Shown here piece after piece: positions 3,095-55,860 of a stretch of 64,000 bases of DNA (position 1 is its first letter; every line of letters begins with the position of its first letter). The stretch spans positions 186,001-250,000 of IMG/VR virus record IMGVR_UViG_3300044796_000662. One strand, given 5' to 3'. The translations under genes were made by a program, and so were the position numbers. The notes beneath the pieces are model-generated. The model worked only from the letters and a program-made list of their open reading frames with translations. It was not told the origin of the DNA and ran no database searches.

Positions 3095-3700
3095 TCAGGG
3101 CTTGGCCTTGCGCCGAAGCTCCCGAAGCTTGTCCGAAGCGCCCGAAAGGGTGCTATCCGACTCGGTTTTCTTGGCCTCGATGCGACTCTCGGTGTTTTCG
3201 GGCCTGATCGTCGCTGGGATGAACGTCGGAGTGTTGTCCTCGGGCACCGCCGCACGCACCAGCGGGCCGCCGTTGCCCTGGACCTGGACGATGGTCGTCG
3301 TCGAGGGACCCTGCGTGCGAAGAAGCTCCAAGATCGTGTCCAGCTTGACCGTGGCCCGCTGTTCAGCCGCCAGAGCGTCCTGGCGTTGCTTCTCAAGAGC
3401 TTCCCGCAGACGCTTGTTCTCTTCTTCGAGGGCCTGCTGGCGAGCCGCAAGCGAAGGGTCCGGAGCCGCTGCAACGGGCTCGGTTGAGCCCGGGGGGATG
3501 ATGACGTTTCGCTGGACGTAGGGACCCGACTGGATGAGGCAGATGTACTTCTGCCCGATAGCCCGCCAGAGATCCTTGGACTTGTTCGCTTTGTCCGCCG
3601 GGATCGTGACCGTATGGCCGTGGGGAACACCCACCCCCAAGTCCGTGATGAAGTGGATCCCGGCGACGAGGCCGAAGACGGTGACATCGCTCACGGCCAT
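3095..3700 (-). CDS. Hypothetical protein with central coiled coil
   Basis: ORF abuts neighbours; heptad segment LAARQQALEEENKRLREALEKQRQ. Confidence 0.7.
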   Translation of the reverse strand: MAVSDVTVFGLVAGIHFITDLGVGVPHGHTVTIPADKANKSKDLWRAIGQKYICLIQSGPYVQRNVIIPPGSTEPVAAAPDPSLAARQQALEEENKRLREALEKQRQDALAAEQRATVKLDTILELLRTQGPSTTTIVQVQGNGGPLVRAAVPEDNTPTFIPATIRPENTESRIEAKKTESDSTLSGASDKLRELRRKAKP

Positions 3701-9900: not shown

Positions 9901-12900
9901 AGCGAAGATCGAGTCGAGCGGCGGGAGCGTTGCCGAAGGTGGGATCTGCGCCGGGACGATGAACGGCACTTGTGCCGCCTGTCCGAAGCCCGTGTAGATG
10001 TAGTCGGTAGGCGGGAGGATCGCGCTCGGAGCAGGAACCCCAATGAACGTGGCCGCTGCCTGTGCAGCTTGACCAAAGCCAGCGTACACGGACGTGGGAG
10101 GGGGCAGAGCAGGAACAACTGGCGGCGGAATCGCAGGAATGATCTGCGCGGCCTGCGTCGGGAAGCCGAATCCCGCGAAGACGTAATCGGTCGGCGGGAG
10201 CTGTGCGCTCGGCGGGAGGATCGTCGGCTGGACGAAGAACGGTGCCTGCGAAGGCTGGCCGTACCCCGCATAGACAGAGTCGAGAGGAGGCAGGCTCGCA
10301 TTCGGCGGGAGTACGAAGGGCTGAACGAGCTGTGCGTTCTGAGCAGGCTGGCCGTACCCAGCGTACACGTAGTCCGTGGGAGGGAGCAGAGGTACGAATG
10401 GCGGCGGTGTTCCAACGAAGGTCGCTGGGGCCTGAGCTGCCTGACCGAAGCCCGCGTACACGTAGTCCGTGGGCGGAAGCAGCGGCACGAAGGGGGGCGG
10501 AACCGCAGGGATGATCTGCGCCGTCTGCGAAGGTTGGCCGTATCCCTTGAGGACGTAGTCAGTTGGCGGAAGCAGCGCGAGTTGAGGGAGGTTGAACGGC
10601 TGGTACAGCGCTGCGTTCTGCGGGGGTTGGCCGTATCCTGCCAACACATAGTCGGTGGGCGGTAGCTGCGCGTTCGGCGGAAGCACAAACGGTTGAACGA
10701 AGAACGGCGCTTCTGCGGGTTGACCGTACCCGGCCAGCACGTAGTCGGTCGGAGGAAGCACCGCGGACGGCGGCAAGACCACCGGCTGGACGAGAGATGC
10801 ATTCTGGGAGGGTTGGCCGTATCCCGTAAGAACCGCGTCAAGCGGAGGCAGGATCGCGCTCGGCGGGATCACGAACGGCTGCACGAGCTGCGCGTTTTGC
10901 GAGGGTTGGCCAGCACCCGTGTTGGTCTGCCCGCCGAACGCGCCCGTGATGCCGATGGGCTCCCCGTTCTCAATCGCCTGGAAGAGCGGCAAGTCCGCTA
11001 CTAGGGGCGGGAGGAACGAGTTGCCATAGACGTACCCCACGAGCGGATTGGCGCCCTGTCCGAGAGCGCCGCCCGAAGTGGCGTTGAACGTACCACCATC
11101 CGAGATGTACACGGTAGGCGGTTTGGTACGGTAACGCTCTGCCGGAGCCTCGATGTCGAACTCCGTGAAGGTGATGACAGGAGGTTGTGCGGCTTGGCCG
11201 GCACCTTGACCAAGAGCACCGCCTGAGGTGGGGTTGAAGGACCCACCGTCCGAGATGTACACGTGCGGCGGCTTCCCACGGCCACGCAGCGCCTCCGCGT
11301 CGATGTCCAACTCACTGTAGAGGGTAATGGGCGAAGGAGGCGGCCCCGGCTGGCCGTACCCAGTGTTGGTCTGCCCTCCGAACGCACCCGTGATGCCGTT
11401 GGGTTCACCGTTCTCAAGAGCCTGGAACGGAGGCAGGTCGGCACGGATCTGATTGAAGATCTGCTCCTGCGCGTTGAGGTTGATGGTCGTCGCAAGCCCC
11501 AGGGGCTTGAATGCGGCAACCGCAGCGCTCCAGTTGTAGCTCGACGTGAACGTACAGCCTGGCGAGTAGGTGCCAGGGGCGCCCGCGAGCTGGTCTTGCT
11601 CCATCGCTGCGCCGGAGTTGAAGTTGTACCTGGTGATCGCACCGCCCGTGGGCACGTAGCCGGTGCTAGACCCGTTCGTCTCGATGACCGTGAACAGGAG
11701 GTCCGTGCCTACCGTTGTCGTGATCGGCACTGACACGGAGGTGCTTGCAGTGGTGCCGATCGCGGTCGCCACATCAAGGGGATCCGACGTGTTCTGGACA
11801 CCGGAGTATTCCACCACACTGAGTTCGTAGTAGTTGGATCCACCCCAAGTCGCGGTGACGGCGTTGCTAGCGTGGGCAGCGATGTTCCAAGCGTAGTAGA
11901 TAGCGACGATACCCCCAGGACTGACCACTGCCGAGTGGTACACGTTGCCAGCGGTATCAGTGACCGAGATGGGACCACCAGTGGGCGAGAACACCGCCGC
12001 CACAAGCAGGTTGCCCGCTGTGTTCGAGCCGGTGAACGTAGCCGTGACGCTGGTACCTGGGGCGACGTTGTTGCTCGCCACCTGGACGTACGTGGGAGCC
12101 GTGATGCCGGGGTTTCCCGCGATGCTCAACGAACCAAACTGACCACTGATGTTGAGGTACCCCGTAAGGGTAACAACATCGAGTCCCTTCAAGATCGTTT
12201 GCTGCGTTGGGGGAAGCCCCCACGGCTGCATCGCGGGGGACAGGACATCCAAGGGGCTCGCGTAGATGGTCCCCTTCGCCGGCACGATAGAACCGGCCCC
12301 TGCGTGGAGAGCTATGCTGTAGGGCAGCACCTCGGGAGCCTTGAAGGGCGATGAGTGCGAGACGTACGCGACGCCTGGCGATTGACCGTACCCGGCCTTG
12401 ACGCCTGTTGTCGCCGGAAGCTGTGGCGACTCGCTAACCGAGGGTCTGGTGATTGTGTTGATGTTCGACAGACCCGCAAAGCTCTGTGCCTTGAAGGTCA
12501 CAATGCAAGAGACAACCGAACCGCCCGACGACGCGATCGTGGAAGTGCTGCTGTAGGCCCCGGTCGATGTGACTACACGATCGGCCACACCATTCCACGG
12601 ACCGTTGCCACCGAGACCTCTGGAAGTCCAAGTGGGGTCCAACGCTGAAAGGTTGTTACCCGCCCAAGCGAGCCAGTTGAACAGAAGCTCGGTGGCTTGG
12701 GTTGTTGTGGGGGTAGGACCCGTTGTGAAGCTCGTACCAGACGAACCCGTGTAGGTATCGACAGAAACGTCTGGACCAGCAAGCCCGCTGTACTCCAAGG
12801 CCCACACGTAGAAGCTCTGCATGCCTCCCGTGGTGTACGTGACCGTGATGTGCGTGGCGCCCGCGATCGTGATCTTCGAGTAGTAGACCCCCGTCTCGTA

Positions 12901-15186
12901 CGTGCTCGCGTCGTCGAACGTGGTGAGGGCCGGATAGTACGAGTTGCCCTTGTCGTCGGTAACCGAGACGAAGCTTGAAGGGTACTGCCCGCTCCAGGCG
13001 ACGATCACGGTGTTGCCCACCGTGGCCGCCACGGGGAGGATGGCCGTAACGGAGGTGACCGCGGTGTAAGCCACACCCGCTACAGGGGCCTTTTGAATGA
13101 ACGTTGGGTTCGCGTACCCCAAGCCCAGTTGCTGTGTGAGTGTGCCAACAGCACCCGTGACGTTAAGGCCACCGTAGATCGGTTGGAACGAGCCACCGCT
13201 TAGCGCGCCACCTGTCGTTGGCTCGAAGGTCCCGCCGTCTGCGAGCTGCACCGCGGTCAACGAAGGCAGATCAGCGGGAGCAGGTCGCAGACGGTTGTAG
13301 ACCGAGGACTGGATAGCCGAAGGGTTGTTCCAGTAGAAGTTCGCCGCGATCATACCCCAAGAGGCGTTGCCAGCGAGCGTAACTCCCGCGCTGTTGGTAC
13401 CGATCGTCGCACCGATGTCATCTTCAATGATCTGGTCGAAAATAGAAGTGACCAGGCGTTGCGTGTACCCAGAACCGGGCGTCGTCGTCGGTTGCGAGCC
13501 GCTCCACCCGGTAGCGATGATGGCGCCGAGCTTGCTGGTCGTGAAGTTGCCCGTGGATGGCGTGGAGGTGAACAACGAGTTCGTGCTCGTGTCCATCGCC
13601 GCGCCCGTATCGTAGGCGTTGATGCCCGAATACTCGGCCGCGATCACGGTCATCGCGTTGACGTTGGTCGTGGTGAAAGCGACGCTGACCTGATTGCCCG
13701 AGCCGCCCGTGATGCCGAAGGCAACGTAGACGGCCATCGACACGGCGCTGTAGCCGCTGCTCGCCGTGCCCGCCCAGCTCAAGACCTGTGTGTAGGAGTT
13801 CCCTTGGGTATCGGTCACGCCCGTGCCCGGGAAGCCGTTGGCCGGATAGACCATGCCGCACATGACGAAGACCACGATGGCGTTACCCGCGGTGTTCGCC
13901 GATCCGAAGGCTGCCGTCGTCGCTGGGCTTGCAACGCTACCGCCGGGCTCTTCGAGATACGCTCCCTGTTTGAACGTGACGGCCGGAACCGACACGGGAG
14001 TGCCCGACAGGACCATGGTCCCGAGGTTGCCCGTGACATTCAGGAGGCTGAATATGTTGGACGGAACGCCAAGCGTCGTCTGGCCACCAAAAGCACCCGT
14101 GATGCCCGTTTGATTGGCGTGCTGAAGGGTTTGGAACGGAGGCAGGTCCGGAACCACCGGAGGCAAGAAGATGTTGTCGATCTCGTATCCGATGGTGAGC
14201 GGAGGCGGCGGGGTAAACGGACCCGGCGCGACTTGACCGCCAAAGGCGCCCGTGATCCCGTTGTTGTGGCCCGTAGGGATCGCCTGAAACGGCGGCAACA
14301 ACATCACATCGGTCGTAGGCGCGGCCGAAGCTTCCAGGGCGTTGATGACCGATTCGTCCTGTGCTGCGTAGAACCCCGCCGCGACGATCCCCCAGGTCTG
14401 AGCGGTCATGGTCGCAATGGCCGTCACGGACCCCGCAGCACCAAAGACCGCGTACTCCAGAATGTCTGCGTATCCGCTCGTCTTCTGAATGAGCCTGAAC
14501 CCACCACCAGCTCCCGTCGCCGAACCAGTGTTGATCGTCGCTGCGAAGACAATGCACTGGCGGTGAGCGAGGTTGAAGGGCCCAGTGGTGGCGTTTGCCG
14601 TCGTACCCGTAGCCCCAGCGCCGTTGTCGTAAGCAGTGATACCCGCGACCTCGAAGCAGTAGATGGCGGGCGAGGTCATGCTGCCCGTAGCCGTAAAAGA
14701 CACCGCGTTGGAAGCCCCGCCCACCACATTGAAGGCCACGTAAACGGCCATCTGCGTGCTGTTGGGTGTGCTCGATACGGAGGCACCCGGGCAGGCGACG
14801 TATGTGTTGCCTTGAGTGTCCGTGACCGTGTTAAACGTGACGCCCGTGGAGTTCTGGTTGGCGAGGATAACGACGATCGCTCGTCCCGGCTTGACGGTGG
14901 CTCCGAATGTTGCTGTCTGCGTAGACTCCCCGACCGCCACCTGAATGTACTGCGGCGCTTGCGCCATCGAGTTGCTGAACAGCGTCCCGATCCTGCCAGA
15001 CACGTTCAGACCCGCGAGCACCCCTAGATTGGCACCCGTGTTGACCTGGCCACCAAAGGCGCCCGTGATGCCGTTGGACTCGCCGTTATCGATCATCTGA
15101 AGCGGCGGCAAGTCCGCCGTCAAAGGAGGCAGCGAGTGCGTGTGGAACAAAGAGGTGGGCCGCAACGGCGGCGCACCGAAGCCCAC
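6907..15186 (-). CDS. Giant repetitive virion fibre/appendage-like protein (~2759 aa)
   Basis: Open frame 6907-15228; probable start GTG 15186 (GGAG 7 nt upstream). Four Thr/Ser/Gly/Ala-rich beta domains, ~38 Pro-rich repeats, C-terminal Ig-like domain. Confidence 0.8.
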   Translation of the reverse strand: MGFGAPPLRPTSLFHTHSLPPLTADLPPLQMIDNGESNGITGAFGGQVNTGANLGVLAGLNVSGRIGTLFSNSMAQAPQYIQVAVGESTQTATFGATVKPGRAIVVILANQNSTGVTFNTVTDTQGNTYVACPGASVSSTPNSTQMAVYVAFNVVGGASNAVSFTATGSMTSPAIYCFEVAGITAYDNGAGATGTTANATTGPFNLAHRQCIVFAATINTGSATGAGGGFRLIQKTSGYADILEYAVFGAAGSVTAIATMTAQTWGIVAAGFYAAQDESVINALEASAAPTTDVMLLPPFQAIPTGHNNGITGAFGGQVAPGPFTPPPPLTIGYEIDNIFLPPVVPDLPPFQTLQHANQTGITGAFGGQTTLGVPSNIFSLLNVTGNLGTMVLSGTPVSVPAVTFKQGAYLEEPGGSVASPATTAAFGSANTAGNAIVVFVMCGMVYPANGFPGTGVTDTQGNSYTQVLSWAGTASSGYSAVSMAVYVAFGITGGSGNQVSVAFTTTNVNAMTVIAAEYSGINAYDTGAAMDTSTNSLFTSTPSTGNFTTSKLGAIIATGWSGSQPTTTPGSGYTQRLVTSIFDQIIEDDIGATIGTNSAGVTLAGNASWGMIAANFYWNNPSAIQSSVYNRLRPAPADLPSLTAVQLADGGTFEPTTGGALSGGSFQPIYGGLNVTGAVGTLTQQLGLGYANPTFIQKAPVAGVAYTAVTSVTAILPVAATVGNTVIVAWSGQYPSSFVSVTDDKGNSYYPALTTFDDASTYETGVYYSKITIAGATHITVTYTTGGMQSFYVWALEYSGLAGPDVSVDTYTGSSGTSFTTGPTPTTTQATELLFNWLAWAGNNLSALDPTWTSRGLGGNGPWNGVADRVVTSTGAYSSTSTIASSGGSVVSCIVTFKAQSFAGLSNINTITRPSVSESPQLPATTGVKAGYGQSPGVAYVSHSSPFKAPEVLPYSIALHAGAGSIVPAKGTIYASPLDVLSPAMQPWGLPPTQQTILKGLDVVTLTGYLNISGQFGSLSIAGNPGITAPTYVQVASNNVAPGTSVTATFTGSNTAGNLLVAAVFSPTGGPISVTDTAGNVYHSAVVSPGGIVAIYYAWNIAAHASNAVTATWGGSNYYELSVVEYSGVQNTSDPLDVATAIGTTASTSVSVPITTTVGTDLLFTVIETNGSSTGYVPTGGAITRYNFNSGAAMEQDQLAGAPGTYSPGCTFTSSYNWSAAVAAFKPLGLATTINLNAQEQIFNQIRADLPPFQALENGEPNGITGAFGGQTNTGYGQPGPPPSPITLYSELDIDAEALRGRGKPPHVYISDGGSFNPTSGGALGQGAGQAAQPPVITFTEFDIEAPAERYRTKPPTVYISDGGTFNATSGGALGQGANPLVGYVYGNSFLPPLVADLPLFQAIENGEPIGITGAFGGQTNTGAGQPSQNAQLVQPFVIPPSAILPPLDAVLTGYGQPSQNASLVQPVVLPPSAVLPPTDYVLAGYGQPAEAPFFVQPFVLPPNAQLPPTDYVLAGYGQPPQNAALYQPFNLPQLALLPPTDYVLKGYGQPSQTAQIIPAVPPPFVPLLPPTDYVYAGFGQAAQAPATFVGTPPPFVPLLPPTDYVYAGYGQPAQNAQLVQPFVLPPNASLPPLDSVYAGYGQPSQAPFFVQPTILPPSAQLPPTDYVFAGFGFPTQAAQIIPAIPPPVVPALPPPTSVYAGFGQAAQAAATFIGVPAPSAILPPTDYIYTGFGQAAQVPFIVPAQIPPSATLPPLDSIFAGYGQPSQVAQLLVQPPAPYVQLPPQDYILKGFGQATQAPSVVPAQIPPFAVLPPEDSIFIGYGQPAQVAQILPAIPPPRVPDLPPPQSIFAGFGQPAQNAALFQPFVLPPSALLPPPTFLVAGYGKPSLNAFTISQPLVAPSATLPPQDYVVTGYGQAAQIAEVFYPSLFPAPSAILPPEDSIFAGYGTPSLSNIPFTLQPQPPYVALPPEDSIFAGFGKPAQVAVQIIGVPPPAANLPPQDYVYAGYGQAAQAPFFVQPFVLPPSAALPPPQSIYAGYGKPAQVAALFQPFVLPPSAALPPLDSIFAGYGQAAEVPFFVQPTLLPPSANLPPQDYVFAGYGQAAEAPFHVQATILPPTEVLPPQDYIYAGYGKPAEAPFFVQPTLLPPSAVLPPEDSIFAGFGYPPQNPAIYTQPLVPPFAALPPTDYILKGFGQAAQAPTLVQPFVLPPTEVLPPPQSIYAGFGRPAQNAALYQPFVLPPSAALPPLDSIFAGFGFPPQKAVVYTQPLVPPFTQLPPEDAVFAGHGQAAQSPELFQPFVLPPSAQLPPQDYVLKGYGQAAQNAQIIIAPPVAPHAYYLIPPPLLLSSGDPPPAFYATSGGALTGGAGTAAQSAVVFSLPPPSPYVQLPPTDYLFAGYGQAAQAPFISKAAPADYVPLPPLDSLFAGFGQAAQNPAIYIGVPAPAALLPPTDYVLAGYGQAAQVAQIIPAVPPPLVPDLPPPQYVIPGFGFPAQVAQLFQAYDARAPYPTVIPELVVGYGQAAQAPQIIPTIPAPLVPDLPPPQYLFAGFGFPPQNAQIIPAALPPVADLPPQDSIFAGYGVPSQNAFIYVQPPAQYVSLPPISAIIAGYNYQAPVLPPILRTRTTSRLVAFPYWATFFEPHHLPLYVYEKDDDKRRHPVEPYKVTFALYQVKDMFLMPVGPDAREPAHGPGVGHFYVTGVVGEGGQPGIWMVRWTVQETFFSQSFTKDYYFEVLDAVSAHFPDDKTPRGRKRGWD
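7354..10917 (-). repeat. Coding tandem repeat, ~38 units of 30-32 aa (~93 bp): G[YF]GQ[PA][AS]Q-x10-PP-x3-LPPxD[YS][IV][FY]A
   Basis: Units counted by hand in the translated ORF. Confidence 0.9.
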
Positions 15187-15514
15187 GCCCGGACTCCGCG
15201 ATCGTCTCGAACGATACTTCGAACGCATGACGAGCGTGGACGGCCTTGTCGTAGGCTTCCTTCGCCATGTTGAGGGCGATCTCGACGTCCTGGAAGAGCG
15301 AGCGTCGGTTGGCTTCGGCCTTCGCTGCCGAGAAGTCTTCGTTGTTCCAGGTGTTGTCCGCCTGGCGCTGCACCGTCTCGACGAGGGCCTTGTCGAACTC
15401 GGGCACTTCCCCCTTCATGTACTGGAGGTAGTTGTGCAGGAGTCCGAGCACCTCAAGGGAAACACTCGGAGGGTCCTCGGGAGGACGATTGACGAGGTTG
15501 CTCATGGTGACCAT
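15086..15514 (-). CDS. Hypothetical protein (accessory, probably leaderless)
   Basis: CGGTGTAG motif 9 nt upstream of ATG; 3' end overlaps start of the giant gene. Confidence 0.6.
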   Translation of the reverse strand: MVTMSNLVNRPPEDPPSVSLEVLGLLHNYLQYMKGEVPEFDKALVETVQRQADNTWNNEDFSAAKAEANRRSLFQDVEIALNMAKEAYDKAVHARHAFEVSFETIAESGRGLRCAAVAAHLFVPHALAASFDGGLAAASDDR

Positions 15515-43104: not shown

Positions 43105-45129
43105 TCAGCGCACGCGACCGCGAACCCGTCCACCACCGCCGCCCCGGGGTCTCATCCGCTCTGTAAACACACCATGTTTACGGGCTCGGCCCATCTGGTA
43201 GGCCGCGAGCGTCGGTCCGACGTTCGCGTGTAGCCGGTCAGGGTGTGAGTTGTAAACATGCTTCATGTTGCCGAGGCGCTCGTGCGAGAGCCAGATGGCA
43301 CGGATGAGAGCGTCGCTCATGTCGTCGTGGTAGCCCGGGTGCTCAGGGGCGCTGACGACAGTGACGTTTCGGGAGAACTGCTCGGCCTGAAGAGTCAGAA
43401 GCTCGGCGATGAGGGGCGAGTGCTTGACCTGCGCCCCCGCCACTGCGGCAGGGTAGTCGTACAGGACCAGCTTGTGGTCCCACATGAGCGTCTTGACCGC
43501 CTGGTACATCTTCGAGGTCACGTCGCGCGTGAAGAATTCGGCCCGCATCTGCGTGAAGCCCTTCTTCATGAAGGTCTGCTCCATCGACATGCCCTGCCAC
43601 TGGTCGTAGAGCCCGTCCGTGATGTGGAATCGCTTGCTCAGCGACATGACCCAGTTGACGATCTCGTCGAAGTCCAGCCGGTCCACGTTCTGGAGCGTCC
43701 TGGCGTAGTCGGTTGGGTAGTTCGACCCGAGATGCGGGTTGCTCTCCCGCCAGTCCACGCCCGCCTGCCAATACTCGTGGTAGGCGAGAACGATCTTGTC
43801 CCCATCCGGGTATGTGATCGCGATGGCCGTACCGTCGTTGATGACACCGACGTCCATCCCGAGCTGGTGCGGGTAGCGCGGGGTGCCGATGGTCATGGGC
43901 ACGCGTCCAGGCTCGACGCAGTCCATGAGATCCTGCTCACGCTCGATCCAACCGCGAACACGGTCCGAGAAGTTCGCCCCGTGCTCTGTCGAGAAGGTGG
44001 CGGGGTCCTCGTGGTACTTGTCGCGGTAGTAGTCCGGCGAGATGGTCGGGTTGATCTCCCAGGTCGGGGCCTGGATGGCGAGCTTGTTGGCCGCAGCGTC
44101 GCCGCCGCGCATCGCCTGGTGGAACAGCTCATAGAACTTGCCCGCCTTGTTGAGCGGGGAGCTGATGCAGATGATCCGGCCCTCGTTCGGCCCGATGGGG
44201 TTCGAAGTGTTTTCCGGATCCTTCGGCGAGAAGGCCGCCTTGCTCGGCGAGATCGCGTCGTAGATCTCCTTGGCGCTCGACTGACCCTCGTCGATGAAGT
44301 GCGCCATCTCGTCGAGGATGATGACGATGTTACCGGCACCGCGGAGACCCTTGGCGACGCACGACTTGAACGTGACGCGCAGAGTGGCCTTACCGTTGAG
44401 GGACTGGAACTTACCGTCCTTGAAGCGCGTGATGACACCGAACCGCTCGATGTCGTAGGGCGTCCTGAACTTGATGTCCGAGAGGGTGCTGGACGCGATG
44501 TACGGCTTGAAGTAGTCGCAGCGCGCCAAGTGCGCGGTCACCTCGTTGAAGAGCAGTGACGCCTGGTCCTTGTCGGTAGCGACGGAGATGATCTGGATGC
44601 GGTTGCCGGGCGGCAGACCGTAGTAGCCCTGCGGGTGGTTCAGGTTGAGTAGACGGTAGACCTCGTAGCTGGCGAAGATGCCCGAGAGGGTCGTCTTGCC
44701 GCCACGGCGCCCGATCGCGAGGATCAGCTCCCGTCGCTCGTGGTCCTGCTCGCCGATGTTGCAGCGGCCTTCGTTGAAGAGGAACTGGAGGTATTCCTTC
44801 TCCGTGAAGTGGTACAGGACACGCGTCTTGAGCATGTCCGTGACTTCGATGGTCTTGTTCTTGTCGTCGAGCGGCAGATGGTAGTAGAGCTTCACGATGA
44901 AGCGCTGCACCGGATACAGGTGCATCGAGAGGCCCCAGTCGCTCTCGATGTACTCCAGAATGTTGAAGATGTGCGGCTGCTTAGCCCTCGGCTGGACAGT
45001 TTCGCCGCCGATCTCCGAGAGCAGACCAAAGGCTTGGTCGTCGAGGACTTCCTGAGCCTTGATCTTCGCCTGTTGGCCCGCAGCCCTGAGAAGAGCCGCG
45101 ATACCGCCACCGTTATTCGACGCTGCCAT
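43105..45129 (-). CDS. terL: Terminase large subunit
   Basis: Walker A GRRGGKTT, Walker B IILDE, ISSP coupling motif, RNase H-like GMDVG..DGTA and HDDMSDA. Confidence 0.92.
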   Translation of the reverse strand: MAASNNGGGIAALLRAAGQQAKIKAQEVLDDQAFGLLSEIGGETVQPRAKQPHIFNILEYIESDWGLSMHLYPVQRFIVKLYYHLPLDDKNKTIEVTDMLKTRVLYHFTEKEYLQFLFNEGRCNIGEQDHERRELILAIGRRGGKTTLSGIFASYEVYRLLNLNHPQGYYGLPPGNRIQIISVATDKDQASLLFNEVTAHLARCDYFKPYIASSTLSDIKFRTPYDIERFGVITRFKDGKFQSLNGKATLRVTFKSCVAKGLRGAGNIVIILDEMAHFIDEGQSSAKEIYDAISPSKAAFSPKDPENTSNPIGPNEGRIICISSPLNKAGKFYELFHQAMRGGDAAANKLAIQAPTWEINPTISPDYYRDKYHEDPATFSTEHGANFSDRVRGWIEREQDLMDCVEPGRVPMTIGTPRYPHQLGMDVGVINDGTAIAITYPDGDKIVLAYHEYWQAGVDWRESNPHLGSNYPTDYARTLQNVDRLDFDEIVNWVMSLSKRFHITDGLYDQWQGMSMEQTFMKKGFTQMRAEFFTRDVTSKMYQAVKTLMWDHKLVLYDYPAAVAGAQVKHSPLIAELLTLQAEQFSRNVTVVSAPEHPGYHDDMSDALIRAIWLSHERLGNMKHVYNSHPDRLHANVGPTLAAYQMGRARKHGVFTERMRPRGGGGGRVRGRVR

Positions 45130-50571: not shown

Positions 50572-51471
50572 TCAGGTGACAGTCAGAGTGACCGACAGGT
50601 CTTGGTAGGAGTTGCTAGAGAAGCCGCTGACCCGGAGCGTCTCCGTGTACGTGCCCGGCTGAAGGTTGCAGGACGTGGACACTGCGACCGACACGTTGAC
50701 CGCACCGCTCGAAGCGATGGTGCCAGACGACGGCGTGAAGCTGGTCAGCCAGGGCGACAGCCCAATGAGCTTCTGCACCTGGAAGTTGAGGATCGAACCC
50801 GCGGGCCCCGTGTTCTGCACCTGGAAGGTCTGTGCGGGGATGGGGACAGGCGGATTGCTGAACGCGATCCCGTTGAACGAGAGCGCCGTGGGAGACAGGG
50901 TGATCGTCGCTTGCGGTAGAACCGTGATCGTGACCGGGATGGTCTGGGGGTTGTTCGTCGCGTTCACGTCTTGGATGGTGACAGTCGCCGTGTAGGGGCT
51001 GTTGAGTGCAAGCAGGTCAGTCCCATCCACGGACACGTTGGTCATGCCCGAGGCGCCGAAGGCGATACCGCCCATGTTCGCCGGCGTCGCCTGCAAGTAG
51101 TCCGCTGACGTGGTCACGGAGGGGGACAGGAGCGAGCCGTACACGCCACTGTTCGTGACCGTGATGATCTGGGGCGTTCCGAACCCCTGCCCCTGCGTCG
51201 TCGTGAACGCAAGCGAAGTCGGCGCTGCCACGATGAGCGGAGCGAACGCCGATTGCAGCTCCGTGATGCTGTTGCCCATGGCCGTGACCACCGGGCCGGG
51301 CAACGGGATGTTGTCCCGAAGCAGCCCGAACGGGCTCACGATGTCCCGGACTTGAAAGGACACCACCGCCCTCGACACGTCAACGCGTGTCGTCCACCGC
51401 CACGTCCCCTGAGGAACCTGGATGGCGTACTGGTAGTCCTGAGTCTGTAGGTTGGACGCGAGGCTCGGCAC
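50572..51471 (-). CDS. BACON/Ig-like domain virion protein
   Basis: Two repeats of PTxLxF...Q...V.N.G..GS.L...W/YL...P..G. Confidence 0.75.
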   Translation of the reverse strand: MPSLASNLQTQDYQYAIQVPQGTWRWTTRVDVSRAVVSFQVRDIVSPFGLLRDNIPLPGPVVTAMGNSITELQSAFAPLIVAAPTSLAFTTTQGQGFGTPQIITVTNSGVYGSLLSPSVTTSADYLQATPANMGGIAFGASGMTNVSVDGTDLLALNSPYTATVTIQDVNATNNPQTIPVTITVLPQATITLSPTALSFNGIAFSNPPVPIPAQTFQVQNTGPAGSILNFQVQKLIGLSPWLTSFTPSSGTIASSGAVNVSVAVSTSCNLQPGTYTETLRVSGFSSNSYQDLSVTLTVT

Positions 51472-51530
51472 TGTATGGACGCTCCGGTGCTCACGGAACG
51501 TGGCCGATAAAAGAAACCGCGCCGGTTCGG

Positions 51531-51749
51531 CTAGTTGGGCCGGGTCGGAAAGACCTGTTTGGCCACAAAACGCGACAAACCGTCGAGGCGATGCATCGCC
51601 CGAAAAAGCCGGTGACGCACGCGACCCTGCGTCAGCCCCAGGGCGGCGGCTGCCGCCTTGATGGGGTAGGGCTCGTTCCGACTTCTCATCTCATCCAGGG
51701 TCCGAAGGATCTGGACGTCCATGTCGTCGATGATGTCAGAGGACTTCAT
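51531..51749 (-). CDS. Small HTH protein (copy of second HTH of upstream gene)
   Basis: Start MKSSD 51749; DVQIL...AAALGLTQGRVRHRLFRA. Confidence 0.7.
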   Translation of the reverse strand: MKSSDIIDDMDVQILRTLDEMRSRNEPYPIKAAAAALGLTQGRVRHRLFRAMHRLDGLSRFVAKQVFPTRPN

Positions 51750-52371
51750 CACCGCCACGATTGGCCCACTGGGGGAGTTTGACCTCGCGGAGGATGTTGA
51801 AGCGCTTCGAGCTGATCGCGTTGAAGACCTTGTGGTACGGGATGAACTTCCCATCCTTGGCGGCGGCGTCCTTGAGGGTCTTGACCGCCTTGAAGAAGCG
51901 GTGTCTCACGCGCCCCTGTGTGAGCCCCAGGCGGCTGGCCACCTCACTCTGGCAGGTCGTCTGCCACATGCCGATGAGGATGTCCACGTCGATGTCCTTG
52001 AAGACTTCGGGCAGATCGCGCCGCAAGTCCTCTTCGGTCACGGGCGGGATGCTGAGCAGGAACTTGATGCGCTGCAAGCCTCGATCGAGTCGATAGCTGA
52101 TCGCAGCCTGCGTCACCCCGAAGATCTCGGCGATGTCCGCCTGACGCTTCTTCTGGATGTAGTAGAGCTGGATGAGATCCGCCTCCCTTTGGGGGATGCG
52201 ATTGAGCAGAGGCATGATGCGGTCTTCGTAGTCCCCGTCTTGGAGGATCTTCTCGACCGTATCGTCCTCGGGCTCTTGTACCGGCTCTTCGTCGCTGTAG
52301 GGATCGTCGTTGGTGGCAAAGCGGTTGGCGAGTTCGGACGGGTCAACCGGAATCACGTAGCCGATGGTCAT
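51736..52371 (-). CDS. Tandem sigma70 region-4-like HTH protein
   Basis: LNRIPQREADLIQLYY....QADIAEIFGVTQAAISYRLDRG and QSEVASRLGLTQGRVRHR; ATG 52371 with GAGGGA SD. Confidence 0.8.
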   Translation of the reverse strand: MTIGYVIPVDPSELANRFATNDDPYSDEEPVQEPEDDTVEKILQDGDYEDRIMPLLNRIPQREADLIQLYYIQKKRQADIAEIFGVTQAAISYRLDRGLQRIKFLLSIPPVTEEDLRRDLPEVFKDIDVDILIGMWQTTCQSEVASRLGLTQGRVRHRFFKAVKTLKDAAAKDGKFIPYHKVFNAISSKRFNILREVKLPQWANRGGDEVL

Positions 52372-52408: not shown

Positions 52409-54385
52409 TCACCGAGCGCGTTCGTTGAAGAACACGGCCAGGATAGGCTCGGCCTGTACATCCACATCTGTGAGTCGCTCAGCGGCGACCTTCTGATCTG
52501 GGTTTGGCACGACCTCCGTGAGGGGAACGTCCCGGAGGGTCATGATGTCGAGGTTCAAACGAACCTGTGCTTCAGCGTCCCGGAGGCACTGATAGCGGAG
52601 CTTAGTCAAGCCTGCCAGATTCGAGGCGTAGATGCCATCTATGGTTCCGTAGAGCTGGACCAACCCCAGAAGCACCTTCTGTGGAACGGTCGGAACCCCA
52701 GGCAGGTTGTCTGACGAATCCCCAAGCAGTGCGCGAAGAGTCACGATCTGTGACGGCCCCACACCCCACTCCTGCGTCAGTGCGTCGATGTCGTACAGCA
52801 CTTCCTTTCGCTTACCTTGTGCCGGCGTCAGTAGACGGTCGGTCTCTGTCACGAGCTGTAGAAGGTCACGGTCCGAGGAGAGGACCACGTTGTTCTGGCC
52901 CTTCAAGGTGCCACGCAGGAGGCTTGCGATGGCATCGTCGGCCTCCTCCCCCTCGTTGTAGAGCTGTGTAACCCCCAGAATCGGGAGCACCTCGCGCAGC
53001 CAGGCCACCTGGTCCCAGCGCACGCCCCCTGTCTCTTCTTCCGCGAAGCCGCTCGAACGGTTGGCCTTGTAATCGGCGTACTTGGCCTTGCGGGTTCGAT
53101 TCGAGCCATCCCAGACCACGTAGATGCTGGCCCCTGGGAACCGCTTGAGCAGGCTTGCGGTCGAGCGCAGAAAGCCGAAGAGCACGCCCGTGTGCCTCTG
53201 TTGCGTGTCCCGCATGTCCGACATGCCGGGCGCGTAGAAGCAGCGATAGGCGAGGTTGAAACCGTCGATGATGACGTTCTGGACTTCCACGCTGGTCTCC
53301 TCAATCTCGCGCTCGATCTCCGAGACGTCGTCTGACAGGTTGTCCAGGCTCTCTTGCAAGTCCTGCAACGTGAGCCACTTGAAGTACCGTCCCTCGATCT
53401 CCGAGAAGGGCGTCTCGACGAGGCTCTCGCGGACAAGGGGTACGAGACCGTCCCAACGCTGTGTGAGACCATCAAGCAGGATCGCTCGGTCCCCTTGCTC
53501 CTTGAGCTTGCTCGCATCGAGGGGGATGTAGAACGACCGAACGAGGTTGGAGCGATGCTCCAGCCCCTCAGCCCAGTCGTTCAGTTGCGTATAGACGTCG
53601 AGTCTCGGACGTATCCGGGTGATGAGCGTGGGCGCGGTAAGTGCTGTCTGGATGGTCGTGAAACTCTCGACCTTGGACACCCAAGACTGGAACTGGAGAT
53701 ACTCCTGGTAGTGCTTGTTCAGGCGCGCGAAGCCGACGAGCTTTGGGGCCTTGAGCAGATCGTAGAAGTCGTTGAACCAGTCACGGACGCCTGCGAAGCG
53801 GTCCATGGCCGGAGCCTTGGGCGCCTTGGAGACGAGCCGGAGGAAGCTCCGGGGCAGCGTGATGATCGAGTCCTTGGAGCGTAGAAGAACCCGTACCTGG
53901 ACCTTGTCCTCTTCGGGAATCTCCTCGATGACCTTCGCCTGGATCTGGCGATAGGCCCCTGAGGTGATGAGAACCGTGTCGTCGATACCGATCCCCTGGT
54001 CGGTCTCGACATGGATCTGCCGCTTCATCTTGTCGATGGCGGAGTTCTCGACGAAGGCTAGCTGCCGGACAGGACGCCCCCCGTTCTCGGGTCGGACGAT
54101 CTTCGTGAGCACCTTCTGGACGTACTTGGAGTTGTCCAGTCTGTTGTAAAGCGTATCGGGGTGCTTGTGCCGAATGAACGCGTAGCCATCGACGAGGTAG
54201 TGCACTACCCGGTCCTCACCGATCTGCGTGACCGCAGCCGGAATGAACACTTCGGCGCCCTTCACTGCGTAGGTGATGGAACGCCGGACGATGTCCGGGT
54301 CCTCCCCTTCGGCCTTGGAACTCAGTTCCAAGATGACCCACTGGTTGGGATCGCTCGTCACAACGACTACGCCCTCCTGGGCCAT
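52409..54385 (-). CDS. NusG (NGN+KOW) fused to Pol I-type 5'-3' exonuclease/flap endonuclease
   Basis: N-term WVIL...EVFIP...LVDGYAFI...V.ITSGAY....AKV.E; C-term IIDGFNLAYR, VVWDG, YKANR, EADD, SSDRDLLQL, GDSSDNLPGV. Confidence 0.85.
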   Translation of the reverse strand: MAQEGVVVVTSDPNQWVILELSSKAEGEDPDIVRRSITYAVKGAEVFIPAAVTQIGEDRVVHYLVDGYAFIRHKHPDTLYNRLDNSKYVQKVLTKIVRPENGGRPVRQLAFVENSAIDKMKRQIHVETDQGIGIDDTVLITSGAYRQIQAKVIEEIPEEDKVQVRVLLRSKDSIITLPRSFLRLVSKAPKAPAMDRFAGVRDWFNDFYDLLKAPKLVGFARLNKHYQEYLQFQSWVSKVESFTTIQTALTAPTLITRIRPRLDVYTQLNDWAEGLEHRSNLVRSFYIPLDASKLKEQGDRAILLDGLTQRWDGLVPLVRESLVETPFSEIEGRYFKWLTLQDLQESLDNLSDDVSEIEREIEETSVEVQNVIIDGFNLAYRCFYAPGMSDMRDTQQRHTGVLFGFLRSTASLLKRFPGASIYVVWDGSNRTRKAKYADYKANRSSGFAEEETGGVRWDQVAWLREVLPILGVTQLYNEGEEADDAIASLLRGTLKGQNNVVLSSDRDLLQLVTETDRLLTPAQGKRKEVLYDIDALTQEWGVGPSQIVTLRALLGDSSDNLPGVPTVPQKVLLGLVQLYGTIDGIYASNLAGLTKLRYQCLRDAEAQVRLNLDIMTLRDVPLTEVVPNPDQKVAAERLTDVDVQAEPILAVFFNERAR

Positions 54386-55860
54386 GTGCGCTCGAATTCC
54401 CGTCGCCAGTCTTCCGGCGTCAGAATGCGATTCATCTCGTCCTCTGTTCCTTGATGGAAGGACAGCGGAACGTCAATGTTGCCTGGGTTGGAACGGCTCC
54501 GAGGCCGCCCCAACGGCACAGCCTTGTGGTCTTCGGAGGTGAGAGCGTAAGGGTCCCCTGAGCCGATAGCTCCGATGCCGTCCGCCCGCATCTTGCCGTT
54601 GCCCCCATTGGTTGCCGCGTGGACGATGGGGACTTGGGGTGCCGGAGAGGGGGAGGGTGGCGCCGCCGTTGTCACGGGAGACGGTGCAGACACCGGCTGT
54701 GACACCGCAGGAGGCGTTGAGGGGGTAGCTTGAACCGCTGCGGTCTGAACAGGGACCGAAGCGACGGCCATGGGTGCAGACACGGACAGCACAAGAGGCT
54801 GCGCCCCCATCTGTTGGGGAACGGCGCCGTTGGACTGCGCGAGGCTCACGATGTCGCAGACAAGGCTGATCCGCGACACTGCCCGATGCCGAAGGAAGTA
54901 TTCGGCCAGCTTGGTGCACCCCGTGGTGAACCGCTGGTAGACCTGCTCGGCCAGTTGCCGGTCCACGTACACGAAGTCGGCCGCCATGTTGTTGGCAAGC
55001 CGGAACGAGTTCATGGCCGCCTCGGCAAGACCTGCGGCCACCTGGTCAGCGGGCACTCGCTCGCATGCCTGGTCCACGAGTTCGAGAGCCTGCTTGGGGT
55101 TCCCGAGCGCAAGGAGGATCTGGTAGTACGTCGAGACGACACTGAGGTGTAGGTACTCTCGAACAGACTCGACCGTGACCGACCCCATCTGGGCGATCAT
55201 CTCCAGCTTGTTCAAGATGTCCCGGACGTGCCCGCCCGAGTGATCGATCACGATCAACACCGCGTCGTCTTGGTACTCGACCTTCTCGGTTTCGAGCACC
55301 ATTCGCATCCGCCCGAGCACGTCCTCACGAGTGACCTTACGGATCGGGTACGTCTCGCAGCGGCTCTGGATGGTCCCGCGGATGTTCTGAGGCTCGGTCG
55401 TACAGAAGATACCGAGGAGCTTCTTCTCCTCGATGGGCTTGAGCAGGACGTCCTGAGCCTCCTTGCTCATCCGGTGCGCCTCGTCGAAGAGGTAGATGCG
55501 GATGGGCGCCCCCATGGGCGGCATGTACGGGAGGTCTTCGAGCAGGTCACGGACGTTGGCAACGCCGCCGTTACTAGCCGCGTCGCGCTCCGTGAAGGCA
55601 CTGGGCTGGTCCTCCAGAATCGCGAGGCACTGCTCGCAGACGTTGCAGGGCTCCCACTCCTCACGGTTCAAGTTCTGACAGAGGGCCGCCCTCGCCAGCA
55701 CACGGGCAAGGGTGGTCTTGCCCTGCCCGTGACCGCCCGCGAAGATGTAGGACGTGTTCAGGATGGTCCCGTTCCTCAAGCGAGCCTTGATGAGCTGGAC
55801 GGATCCCTCCTGACCGAGCACCTCGGAGAACTTGCGCGGGCGGTACTTAGTGTCCCACAT
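54367..55860 (-). CDS. dnaX: DNA polymerase III gamma/tau-like clamp loader subunit
   Basis: KYRPRKFSEVLGQ, GGHGQGKTT, C..PCNVCEQC Zn module, DEAH, SRC, Pro-rich C-terminal linker. Confidence 0.92.
   Translation of the reverse strand: MWDTKYRPRKFSEVLGQEGSVQLIKARLRNGTILNTSYIFAGGHGQGKTTLARVLARAALCQNLNREEWEPCNVCEQCLAILEDQPSAFTERDAASNGGVANVRDLLEDLPYMPPMGAPIRIYLFDEAHRMSKEAQDVLLKPIEEKKLLGIFCTTEPQNIRGTIQSRCETYPIRKVTREDVLGRMRMVLETEKVEYQDDAVLIVIDHSGGHVRDILNKLEMIAQMGSVTVESVREYLHLSVVSTYYQILLALGNPKQALELVDQACERVPADQVAAGLAEAAMNSFRLANNMAADFVYVDRQLAEQVYQRFTTGCTKLAEYFLRHRAVSRISLVCDIVSLAQSNGAVPQQMGAQPLVLSVSAPMAVASVPVQTAAVQATPSTPPAVSQPVSAPSPVTTAAPPSPSPAPQVPIVHAATNGGNGKMRADGIGAIGSGDPYALTSEDHKAVPLGRPRSRSNPGNIDVPLSFHQGTEDEMNRILTPEDWRREFERTWPRRA

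What the first reader, a model, noticed from the sequence alone, without database searches (positions are those of the whole stretch)
51531..52371. Sigma-region-4-only tandem HTH protein followed by a mini-protein with an identical recognition helix
Seen: a 211-aa protein with an acidic N-terminus and two sigma4-like HTHs but no recognisable sigma region 2. The next gene (72 aa) repeats D.D..IL...LGLTQGRVRHR.F.A...L, with LGLTQGRVRHR exactly conserved despite synonymous DNA changes. The pair ends the replication operon just before the first late-motif gene. Inference: a split-sigma/co-activator plus a same-site competitor, forming an early-to-late switch.
Basis: partly seen in the sequence, partly recalled or inferred. 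Interest (0 to 1): 0.65.

Follow-up and report, generated by a model that had tools for sequence, protein, structure and literature searches.

The report
Tandem sigma4 factor plus mini-paralogue
A huge uncultured phage carries a strongly conserved transcription protein made of two sigma-region-4-type DNA-binding modules and no sigma region 2, followed by a small, dispensable copy of its second module that keeps the same DNA-reading helix. It is an interesting variant of known phage transcription factors, but the tools available here cannot show that it is a switch.

Summary
Window 51736-52371 (-) encodes a 211-aa protein. It has a conserved N-terminal peptide, an acidic disordered linker, a sigma-70 region 4 domain, a second sigma4/LuxR-type HTH and a conserved tail, and it has no sigma region 2. 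Window 51531-51749 (-) encodes a 72-aa paralogue of the second HTH. LGLTQGRVRHR is identical in both despite 6 synonymous nucleotide differences.

The 211-aa protein is a core gene of a clade of 250-570 kb uncultured phages, with at least 750 homologues and dN/dS 0.04. It always sits after DnaX and a NusG-like gene, directly upstream of the first late promoter (TTTCTTTTATCGG).

The mini-gene is accessory:
- present in the 97% relative, where the helix carries H46Y;
- cleanly deleted in the 95% relative;
- replaced by an endonuclease gene in the 91% relative;
- diverged in one 78% relative;
- absent from 23 of the 25 IMG/VR loci (one further locus ends inside the gene);
- free-standing elsewhere in four other contigs.

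It is nevertheless under purifying selection (dN/dS about 0.17).

The phage also encodes a separate, divergent protein with a sigma2-like domain, 72 kb away. A two-protein sigma is therefore possible but unproven.

The most likely reading is a clade-specific factor that retargets host RNA polymerase, plus an optional modulator that shares its target. The mini-gene is not the early-to-late switch itself.

The parts
51736..52371 (-). P0001, 211-aa tandem sigma4-type HTH protein (stop codon included)
   Evidence: ORF and translation. Homologues all start M-x-x-GYVIPVDP, which fixes the ATG at 52371. Pfam Sigma70_r4 E 7e-16. At least 750 homologues on huge-phage contigs.
52315..52362 (-). Conserved N-terminal peptide GYVIPVDPSELANRF (residues 4-19), a candidate docking motif
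   Evidence: Invariant or nearly invariant columns Y5 V6 I7 P8 D10 P11 R17 in 36 homologues. Low model confidence, with a short helix at residues 11-17. The function is inferred.
52240..52314 (-). Acidic linker (residues 20-44), variable in length and predicted disordered
   Evidence: Alignment A1. pLDDT below 50 for residues 20-39. It aligns with the linker that precedes region 4 of FliA in the PDB profile search.
52039..52239 (-). Module 1: sigma-70 region 4 domain (residues 45-111)
   Evidence: Pfam Sigma70_r4 profile positions 1-49 of 50. VIA-align matches to SigR, BldN, SigL and SigF region 4 at Z 8.7-8.9, rmsd 1.2-2.2. PDB profile hit to SigF region 4, E 1.9e-5.
51856..52035 (-). Module 2: second sigma4/LuxR-type HTH (residues 113-172)
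   Evidence: Second Sigma70_r4 stretch, 23.6 bits. VIA-align matches to DesR, NarL and RpoS region 4 at Z 6.3-7.5. Recognition helix TQGRVRHRFF is invariant in 36 homologues.
51898..51930 (-). Codons for LGLTQGRVRHR in P0001
   Evidence: Sequence and codon comparison.
51739..51807 (-). Conserved C-terminal tail (residues 189-211, FNILREVKLPQW..RGGD)
   Evidence: Invariant F191 N192 V197 L199 P200 Q201 W202 G206. Also recognisable in the 43% relative LR745208.1. The function is inferred.
51531..51749 (-). P0002, 72-aa single-HTH paralogue of module 2 (stop codon included)
   Evidence: Translation. Sigma70_r4 E 2.6e-6. BLASTP against module 2, E 4e-10. Orthologues P0122-P0125, L047 and L004. dN/dS 0.16-0.26.
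51609..51641 (-). Codons for LGLTQGRVRHR in P0002
   Evidence: Six synonymous differences from the P0001 copy. Synonymous variation is also seen among four orthologues.
51736..51749 (-). 14-nt overlap of the P0002 start with the P0001 stop codon
   Evidence: Sequence GGCGGTGATGAAGTCCTCTGA. Translational coupling is inferred.
51514..51528 (-). Terminator-like hairpin closing the operon
   Evidence: stem GAACCG-GCG-CGGTT(T) followed by CTTTTATCGG.
51504..51516 (-). Late-promoter motif TTTCTTTTATCGG, 33 nt before the next start codon
   Evidence: 15 of 46 genome sites lie 20-50 nt before called starts. Conserved upstream of the orthologous gene in 17 loci.
50572..51471 (-). First late-motif gene (299 aa, Ig/BACON-like), start of the head and packaging side
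   Evidence: Weak BACON_2 hit. Large terminase lies further downstream at 43105-45129. Order conserved in relatives.
52409..54385 (-). Upstream neighbour: NusG-like N-terminus fused to a 5'-3' exonuclease (658 aa)
   Evidence: 5_3_exonuc_N and 5_3_exonuc domains. Residues 43-179 match phrog_6386, transcription antiterminator, E 1.1e-4. In L003 the NusG-like part is a separate gene, and in L004 the exonuclease part stands as a 309-aa ORF of its own.
54367..55860 (-). DnaX-like clamp-loader gene, first gene of this run
   Evidence: DNA_pol3_delta2 E 1.6e-24.

Best explanation
P0001 is a clade-specific transcription factor of huge phages. These phages have no RNA polymerase of their own and must redirect the host enzyme.

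Architecture of P0001. It looks like the C-terminal half of a sigma factor, an acidic linker plus region 4, extended by a second sigma4/LuxR-type HTH. Two invariant terminal peptides frame it. It is made from the replication (middle) operon, next to a NusG-like factor. The gene ends at a terminator immediately before the first late promoter.

Proposed action of P0001. It most likely acts on RNA polymerase at the change from middle to late transcription. One module would serve as a sigma4-like anchor or DNA reader and the other as a second DNA reader. It may work together with the phage's separate protein P0128, which carries a sigma2-like domain.

P0002. It is an accessory single-domain paralogue of module 2. 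It keeps the whole HTH, including the reading helix, but lacks module 1, the linker and both terminal peptides. Here it is translated from the same mRNA as P0001. It most likely occupies the same target as module 2 (a DNA site, or less likely a protein partner) without delivering the rest of the protein. That would make it a dose-setting partial antagonist or buffer, not the switch.

Shown: the architecture, conservation, gene order, accessory status and purifying selection.
Inferred: RNA polymerase association, the DNA target, and antagonism.
For: Architecture.

Core status and strong constraint:
- At least 750 homologues were found, with both recognition helices and both terminal peptides invariant.
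- dN/dS is 0.04 against the 97% relative.

No phage RNA polymerase beta or beta' was found in the 363-kb record.

Conserved order DnaX, NusG-like, P0001, [variable slot], first late gene:
- Seen in the window, in the IMG/VR loci whose flanks were examined, and in the closest relatives.
- The late motif is real and is conserved at that junction.

The mini-protein is a true paralogue of module 2.

The mini-gene is under purifying selection:
- dN/dS is 0.16-0.26 among orthologues and 0.17 against L047, similar to the neighbouring structural gene at 0.18.
- Synonymous variation runs through the conserved helix codons.

The mini-gene is accessory and dispensable:
- It is absent from 23 of the 25 IMG/VR loci; L028 ends inside the gene and cannot be judged.
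- It is deleted in the 95% relative, which keeps a remnant of its 3' end.
- An Endonuclease_7 gene fills the slot in the 91% relative.
- Only five distinct sequences were found in the protein collections.

The start/stop overlap is shown.
Against: - No experimental or expression data exist.
- No DNA target could be assigned. The late motif varies among phages (TTTCTTTTATCGG, TTTACTTGTAYGC, TTTTACTTATAGG) while the P0001 helices stay invariant. That argues against simple base-specific reading of that motif.
- Late promoters show no conserved element at -35, where a flap-bound sigma4 would sit.
- The mini-gene occurs in other phages away from any P0001 gene, so its function need not be tied to P0001.
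- In the closest relative the mini helix has H46Y while the large protein keeps H.
- The fold test of a direct P0001-P0002 contact gave no verdict.
Confidence: 0.45

Rival explanations
1. Split sigma. P0128 supplies sigma region 2 and reads the -10-like element. P0001 supplies the linker and region 4 and binds the beta-flap. Together they form a two-polypeptide late sigma, as T4 gp55/gp33, SigO-RsoA or Tn916 Sig7-8 do. P0002 competes with P0001 module 2 and sets the timing.
For: - P0128 has a sigma2-like domain. All of the top 11 VIA-align hits are sigma-factor chains, aligned within model residues 10-256, the part that holds the Pfam region-2 match. RpoE scores Z 7.5 and T4 gp55 Z 5.3.
- Sub-threshold Sigma70_r2 matches occur in 4 of 9 family members.
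- No Pfam sigma4 is detected in its C-terminus.
- It co-occurs with P0001 in all five clade genomes examined.
- In P0001, the acidic linker plus region 4 align with the linker and region 4 of FliA and SigF.
- Split sigmas are an established kind (bioRxiv 10.64898/2026.10.01.756105; PMC7824862).
Against: - The two genes are 72 kb apart and are not co-transcribed.
- By eye, the P0128 C-terminus (residues 282-350) looks like a 4-helix HTH of its own, so it may be a complete ECF-like sigma.
- P0128 was not detected in LR745208.1, which does have a P0001 homologue.
- All Z scores are below 8.
- The mini-gene is dispensable and co-translated, so it is a poor timer.
- No interaction test was possible.
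Confidence: 0.2
2. Ordinary bipartite DNA-binding regulator. P0001 binds DNA on its own through two adjacent HTHs, as MarA or Myb-type tandem HTH proteins do. It would repress early or middle promoters, or activate late ones. P0002 would be a helper that binds the same half-site, for example as a dimer, and so acts as a co-repressor rather than a competitor.
For: - The two HTH modules are joined by a very short linker.
- Both recognition helices are basic.
- The early and middle promoter classes carry repeated GGT(T)G boxes. Class 2 is GGTTGATTC-N13-GGGTTGTAGT and class 1 is cGGTGTAGG. These could be operator half-sites.
- Module 2 resembles LuxR/NarL effector domains, which act as stand-alone dimers.
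Against: - No motif could be tied to the protein.
- The conserved terminal peptides and the acidic linker suggest docking to a partner rather than a free DNA binder.
- Module 1 matches sigma region 4 better than any repressor.
Confidence: 0.2
3. The mini-gene is mobile cargo in an insertion hot spot, and its function is not directed at its own P0001. It could be a decoy used against co-infecting relatives or against a host factor that targets module 2. This would be sigma mimicry of the kind seen in PhyR (named from the reporter's own knowledge of that system).
For: - The slot holds different accessory genes in close relatives: Endonuclease_7, an HNH-like gene, or nothing.
- Mini-gene orthologues sit in unrelated small-gene arrays. 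Those contigs share only this gene with the present genome, yet use the same class-1 promoter grammar.
- The mini-gene evolves faster than P0001, with 14% against 3% amino-acid divergence from the closest relative.
Against: - The overlap with the P0001 stop codon is kept in the 97% relative, which suggests integration into that operon.
- The L004 copy sits in the same slot and shares the PxP insertion and the C-terminal PxN. That points to vertical descent there rather than repeated insertion.
Confidence: 0.12
4. The mini-ORF is not a gene. It would be a decaying remnant of a tandem duplication.
For: - It was not called as a gene in the 97% relative's public annotation.
- It has been deleted without obvious consequence in the 95% relative.
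Against: - The frame is intact in six lineages.
- dN/dS is about 0.17-0.26 with saturated synonymous change.
- The N-terminus, the HTH and the C-terminal PxN are conserved.
- A Shine-Dalgarno-like GGCGG precedes the ATG.
Confidence: 0.03

Closest known systems
T4 late transcription set gp55 / gp33 (with the sliding clamp gp45)
   Same: - A phage without its own polymerase divides sigma functions among small proteins.
- Late promoters are a single short AT-rich element with no -35.
- An acidic helical protein occupies the place of sigma4 on the beta-flap.
- The genes lie close to replication genes.
- P0128 shows a weak structural match to gp55 (Z 5.3).
   Different: - No PHROG or Pfam match of P0001 carries a gp33 or late-coactivator annotation among the hits listed, the best 25 of 29 PHROG families.
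- gp33 does not bind DNA (reporter's own knowledge), whereas P0001 has two canonical basic recognition helices.
- No sliding-clamp gene was found in the 363-kb record.
- Nothing in T4 resembles the mini-paralogue.
Minimal single-HTH sigma factors of group 2 jumbo phages (Iyer et al. 2021, PMC7824862)
   Same: They are phage proteins reduced to a sigma4-type HTH, proposed to bind the promoter and the beta-flap. P0002, and each module of P0001, fits that description.
   Different: - P0001 is a tandem of two such modules with extra conserved peptides.
- The clade here is uncultured, and its only match in the phage collection is LR745208.1.
- Homology to those proteins was not tested.
Two-subunit sigma factors SigO-RsoA (B. 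subtilis) and Sig7-Sig8 (Tn916)
   Same: Regions 2 and 4 lie on separate polypeptides that both join RNA polymerase. Here a protein with a sigma2-like domain and a protein with only sigma4 co-occur in every clade genome examined.
   Different: - In those systems the two genes are adjacent and co-regulated. Here they are 72 kb apart.
- P0128 may have its own C-terminal HTH.
- No association data exist.
LuxR/GerE-type stand-alone HTH regulators (for example GerE, 74 aa; reporter's own knowledge)
   Same: P0002 is a protein of about 70 aa that consists only of a tetrahelical sigma4/LuxR-type HTH. Module 2 matches NarL, DesR and DosR effector domains.
   Different: - The sequence matches Sigma70_r4 rather than GerE in Pfam.
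- Dimerisation and DNA binding were not tested.
MicroProteins and sigma mimicry (PhyR-NepR partner switching; reporter's own knowledge, with PhyR listed)
   Same: A small or single-domain paralogue of a transcription-factor domain titrates that domain's target.
   Different: The principle has not been demonstrated here. PhyR mimics a whole ECF sigma in order to bind an anti-sigma, not DNA.

Membership tests
Sigma-70 family sigma factor | Region 2 (core binding and -10 recognition) | tested here: not met
   - P0001 and P0002 have no Sigma70_r2 match.
- Residues 1-44 of the P0001 model are mostly disordered, and no sigma2-like fold was found.
Sigma-70 family sigma factor | Region 4 (tetrahelical HTH that reads -35 and binds the beta-flap) | tested here: met
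   - Fold and sequence are met for module 1 (Pfam 7e-16; Z 8.7-8.9), module 2 and P0002.
- Function (flap binding, -35 reading) cannot be tested here.
Sigma-70 family sigma factor | Binds core RNA polymerase and confers promoter specificity | not testable with these tools
Two-subunit (split) sigma factor | A partner polypeptide carrying region 2 | tested here: inconclusive
   - P0128 has a sigma2-like fold (Z 6-7.5) and sub-threshold Pfam r2 hits, and it co-occurs in 5 of 5 clade genomes.
- It is distant in the genome, and it may be a complete sigma.
Two-subunit (split) sigma factor | Adjacent, co-expressed genes for the two halves | tested here: not met
   The neighbours of P0001 are a NusG-like/FEN gene and the mini-HTH. 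P0128 lies about 72 kb away.
T4 gp33-type late co-activator | Detectable homology to gp33 | tested here: not met
   The PHROG and Pfam hits listed for P0001 are sigma factors, KorA, Q-like and generic HTH families. None is annotated as gp33 or a late co-activator among the 25 of 29 PHROG families shown.
T4 gp33-type late co-activator | Terminal clamp-binding peptide and dependence on a phage sliding clamp | tested here: inconclusive
   - Conserved terminal peptides exist.
- No DNA_pol3_beta match was found in the 363-kb record, which is only 76% complete.
LuxR/GerE-type HTH regulator | Tetrahelical HTH of the LuxR/NarL effector type | tested here: met
   Module 2 matches DesR, NarL, DegU and RcsB effector domains at Z 6.0-7.5. 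The fold is shared with sigma4, so this does not separate the two families.
Dominant-negative mini-paralogue (microProtein-like) | Paralogue of one domain of a larger factor that lacks the other functional parts | tested here: met
   P0002 aligns only with module 2 and lacks module 1, the linker and the terminal peptides.
Dominant-negative mini-paralogue (microProtein-like) | Competes for the same target and reduces the activity of the large factor | not testable with these tools
   Only identity of the recognition helix is shown. Competition is inferred.

The most novel reading that the evidence does not exclude
The clade uses a three-part surrogate sigma on host RNA polymerase. P0128 would act as region 2. 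P0001 would act as a linker plus region 4 with an added second reader. A NusG-like factor would supply processivity. In some lineages a free copy of the second reader, P0002, would act as a decoy that sets the threshold for late transcription or interferes with related phages. That would make it the first sigma-domain paralogue used as an anti-factor.
Probability: 0.12. Interest if true: 0.7.

Novelty: new variant of a known kind. Interest (0 to 1): 0.42.

Why it matters
- Phages of 250-570 kb that lack their own RNA polymerase must reprogramme the host enzyme, and how the uncultured clades do this is unknown.
- P0001 is among the most conserved proteins seen here (dN/dS 0.04, invariant helices). 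It sits exactly at the boundary between the middle and late modules, so it is a prime handle on that programme.
- Natural variants with and without the mini-gene (97% and 95% relatives) offer a ready-made comparison for testing whether a domain-sized paralogue tunes a transcription factor.
- The three promoter classes found in passing give concrete templates for in vitro work.

Tried and rejected
- Complex prediction of P0001 with P0002 gave no verdict, with score 0.00 against a mark of 0.32. It is not evidence either way.
- One contig look-up failed and was repeated later.
- Foldseek against the PDB and BFVD gave no whole-protein analogue of P0001, only sigma4 pieces and phage sigma factors at E of at least 5e-3.
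- Foldseek and PDB sequence searches with P0128 found nothing significant. Only the exhaustive aligner showed the sigma2-like fold.
- Profile-profile comparison of P0128 with P0001 found no shared domain.
- A PDB profile search with the mini family found nothing below E 0.4. A resemblance I recalled between the RVRH helix and the -35 reading helix of primary sigma region 4.2 therefore stays an untested lead and is not used.
- The idea that the late motif is read base-specifically by the invariant helices was weakened, because the motif varies among relatives.
- The clamp-coupled (T4-like) idea has no support beyond gene neighbourhood, since no clamp gene was found.
- The large representative search returned one 746-aa repeat protein (P0126), which looks like a low-complexity artefact of unknown origin. 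I set it aside and did not search further with it.
- The word-based protein search sees only proteins of 116-369 aa for P0001. Longer fusions, for example with a region 2, cannot be excluded.
Full report
**Setting**

The window is bases 186001-250000 of a 362,937-base IMG/VR virus record. The record is labelled provirus and estimated 76% complete. The same proteins also occur on a 569,965-base contig. G+C is about 62%.

The genes discussed here, and the strongest ORFs across the rest of the window, lie on the minus strand. They fall into two modules:
- Upstream of the finding (higher coordinates) are replication and recombination genes: SbcCD-like, PD-(D/E)XK, Toprim, a metallopeptidase, a DnaX-like clamp loader, and a 5'-3' exonuclease.
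- Downstream are unannotated, probably structural genes and the large terminase at 43105-45129.

**The observation**

P0001 (51736-52371, minus strand, 211 aa) and P0002 (51531-51749, minus strand, 72 aa) are as described.
- P0001 matches Pfam Sigma70_r4 with two stretches, E 7e-16. The first covers the whole profile at residues 55-103 and the second lies at about residues 122-166.
- P0002 matches the same family at E 2.6e-6.
- BLASTP aligns P0002 with the second stretch of P0001 at 41% identity, E 4e-10, and LGLTQGRVRHR is identical.
- The 33 bases that encode it differ at six positions, all synonymous.
- The P0002 ATG lies 11 nt before the P0001 stop codon, a 14-nt overlap, and is preceded by GGCGG.
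- A terminator-like hairpin at 51514-51528 follows the P0002 stop.

**Anatomy of P0001**

An AlphaFold model built on 36 homologues has mean pLDDT 72 and is entirely helical. The parts in order:
- Residues 1-44 are a short conserved peptide (GYVIPVDPSELANRF) plus an acidic, length-variable, disordered linker.
- Residues 45-111 superpose on region 4 of SigR, BldN, SigL and SigF (Z 8.7-8.9, rmsd 1.2-2.2).
- Residues 118-189 superpose on the LuxR/NarL effector domain and on RpoS region 4 (Z 6.3-7.5).
- A conserved tail (FNILREVKLPQW..RGGD) ends the protein.

No chain in the PDB or in BFVD matches both modules together. A PDB profile search aligns the linker plus module 1 with the linker plus region 4 of FliA and SigF. 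No region 2 exists in this protein by sequence or by fold.

**Distribution of P0001**

- The word search found 750 homologues at E of 0.001 or better. The 120 listed are 203-220 aa long and 66-100% identical, and many lie on contigs of 150-570 kb.
- The ESM Atlas places the protein among several all-viral clusters.
- In the collection of sequenced phages only one uncultured 485-kb genome, LR745208.1, has a homologue, at 43% identity.
- Across 36 aligned members both recognition helices (TQAAISYRLDRG and TQGRVRHRFFK), the N-terminal peptide and the C-terminal tail are invariant or nearly so.
- Against the 97% relative, dN/dS is 0.04.

Gene order is conserved. In the window, in the IMG/VR loci whose flanks were examined and in the closest relatives it runs DnaX, a NusG-like gene, P0001, a variable slot, a roughly 300-aa Ig-like protein, a 90-130-aa protein, then a 500-750-aa protein. 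In the window, the first 200 residues of the 658-aa upstream protein match a phage antiterminator family (phrog_6386, E 1.1e-4). In L003 this NusG-like part is a separate gene, and in L004 the exonuclease part stands as a separate 309-aa ORF.

**Distribution of the mini-gene**

At the DNA level, the slot after P0001 is as follows:

| Phage or locus | P0001 identity to window | State of the slot |
|---|---|---|
| 23 of 25 IMG/VR loci | 62-76% | No mini-gene |
| L028 | 72% | Ends inside the P0001 gene, cannot be judged |
| L004 | 78% | Diverged 90-aa copy with helix LGMTAVRIKQR |
| L047 | 97% | Intact 72-aa copy, not called in the public annotation, helix RVRYR |
| L044-L046 | 95% | About 190 bases deleted, last bases (CCCAACTAG) remain, 76-nt gap |
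| L049, L050 | 91% | An Endonuclease_7 gene fills the slot |

The L004 copy shares with P0002 a PxP insertion and the C-terminal PxN.

The word search and the exhaustive search of 1.8 billion representatives found only four further sequences, P0122-P0125, at 63-72% identity. Three of them (P0122-P0124) were traced to four contigs, where the gene sits in arrays of small overlapping genes. Those contigs share nothing else with this genome, yet they carry the same class-1 promoter motif. In these sequences ALGLTQGR(V/I)RHRLF is conserved while the codons vary synonymously.

dN/dS among orthologues is 0.16-0.26, and 0.17 against L047. That is similar to the neighbouring 299-aa gene at 0.18.

The mini-gene is therefore a real, selected coding gene. 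It is also accessory, dispensable and mobile within the clade. Gene callers can miss it, so protein databases under-count it.

**Promoters**

Three motif classes stand out in the 363-kb record.

| Class | Motif and position | Support |
|---|---|---|
| 1 | cGGTGTA(A/G)G ending 9-11 nt before ATG/GTG | 34 at called starts, against a median of 0 for permuted hexamers; suggests leaderless mRNAs |
| 2 | GGTTGATTC-N13-GGGTTGTAGT, then about 6 nt to ATG | 16 copies, some in divergent pairs |
| Late | tTcc(Y)(Y)TTAT(S), 20-50 nt before starts that carry Shine-Dalgarno sequences | 15 of 46 sites, against 1-4 for controls; the 13 sites aligned by eye lie between 143 and 287 kb, and nine are in the window |

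The site at 51504-51516 is the first late motif after the replication genes. It is conserved in 17 related loci, although its sequence drifts: TTTCTTTTATCGG, TTTACTTGTAYGC, TTTTACTTATAGG. No conserved element lies upstream of it.

**Other transcription proteins of the phage**

- No RNA polymerase beta or beta' domain and no above-threshold Sigma70_r2 were found in the record.
- Two related genomes gave sub-threshold region 2 matches. Their product has a homologue here, P0128, 351 aa, at about 310.1-311.1 kb of the record.
- In the model of P0128, all of the top 11 VIA-align matches are sigma-factor chains (RpoE Z 7.5, SigW, SigH, SigK, SigB, AlgU and others), aligned within model residues 10-256, the part that holds the Pfam region-2 match. 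T4 gp55 scores Z 5.3. A winged-helix-like segment, which matches excisionases, is inserted in this domain at about residues 120-210.
- Pfam sees no region 4 in the P0128 C-terminus. By eye, residues 282-350 form a 4-helix HTH-like unit.
- P0128 homologues occur in all four related genomes searched, but none was found in LR745208.1.
- A further 132-aa protein with a C-terminal region 4 lies at about 301.5 kb.

**Interpretation**

Shown: P0001 is a core, strongly constrained protein with only sigma4-type modules, at the boundary between the middle and late modules. P0002 is a selected but dispensable paralogue of its second module.

Inferred:
- Because the phage lacks a polymerase, and because module 1 is a region 4 preceded by an acidic linker, P0001 most likely works on host RNA polymerase at the middle-to-late change. 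It may act together with P0128 and the NusG-like protein.
- P0002 keeps the reading helix but none of the other conserved parts. It would then occupy the same target without function, acting as a modulator.
- Because it is co-transcribed, overlaps the P0001 stop codon and is lost in near-identical phages, it cannot be the switch.

The split-sigma reading remains a serious rival, because a sigma2-like protein without a recognisable region 4 co-occurs with P0001. The rivals that treat P0001 as a free DNA binder, or the mini-gene as mobile decoy cargo, are not excluded.

**Limits**

- The host is unknown.
- The complex test gave no verdict.
- Length limits of the word search mean that longer fused relatives could exist.
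- The record is incomplete, so absences (clamp, polymerase) are provisional.

Noticed in passing
whole record G000; in the window e.g. 28033, 26042, 26803, 55887 (minus strand): Class-1 motif cGGTGTA(A/G)G sits 9-11 nt before ATG/GTG at 34 called gene starts, against a median of 0 for permuted hexamers. It looks like a -10-type element that drives leaderless mRNAs. It is dense at 1-110 kb and 250-360 kb of the record and sparse in the late region.
   Followed up: partly
G000:C1 e.g. 2489, 79465/79477, 317081, 320556, 359281/359336 (outside the window): There are 16 copies of a bipartite promoter-like motif, GGTTGATTC-N13-GGGTTGTAGT, followed after about 6 nt by ATG. Some copies form back-to-back divergent pairs. 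Both halves begin GGTTG.
   Followed up: partly
window 3088, 5605, 5968, 18087, 21108, 24235, 26436, 40780, 51512 (minus strand): The late motif tTccYYTTATS lies 20-50 nt before starts with Shine-Dalgarno sequences. It often follows directly after a GC-rich hairpin, so terminator T-tracts and promoter overlap.
   Followed up: partly
G000:C1 about 310.1-311.1 kb (L039:1447-2502, minus strand), outside the window: A divergent sigma-like protein, P0128 (351 aa), has a sigma2-type domain interrupted by an inserted segment of about 90 residues that resembles a winged helix or excisionase. No Pfam region 4 is detected. It is conserved in four related genomes.
   Followed up: partly
window 52409-54385 (minus strand); L003 5318-5941; L004 5060-5989: In the window a NusG-like (NGN/KOW) antiterminator domain is fused to a 5'-3' exonuclease. 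In L003 the NusG-like part is a separate 207-aa gene, and in L004 the exonuclease part is a separate 309-aa ORF.
   Followed up: partly
slot between the P0001 homologue and the first late gene: L049/L050 3158-4012, L015 6738-7610, L006/L007 about 6640-6830: This slot is an insertion hot spot. It holds an Endonuclease_7 gene, a 290-aa HNH-like gene, short Zn-ribbon remnants, the mini-HTH, or nothing, depending on the phage.
   Followed up: partly
L047 about 3123-3341: The intact 72-aa mini-gene of the 97% relative is absent from the public gene calls of that contig. Small genes that overlap an upstream stop codon are under-represented in the protein collections.
   Followed up: yes
L003 3508-5394 (LR745208.1): The DnaX-like protein there is 628 aa, against 497 aa in the window. 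By eye it carries an intein-like insertion after the Walker B region. This was not tested.
   Followed up: no
G000:C1 about 301.25-301.65 kb (L031:1252-1650, plus strand): A 132-aa protein has a C-terminal sigma-70 region 4 (46.6 bits) and a Cys-containing N-terminal half. It is a third sigma4-bearing gene in the record, lying among tRNA-like sequences.
   Followed up: no
window 6907-15228 (minus strand): A very long ORF of 2773 aa lies in the late region. It was not examined.
   Followed up: no
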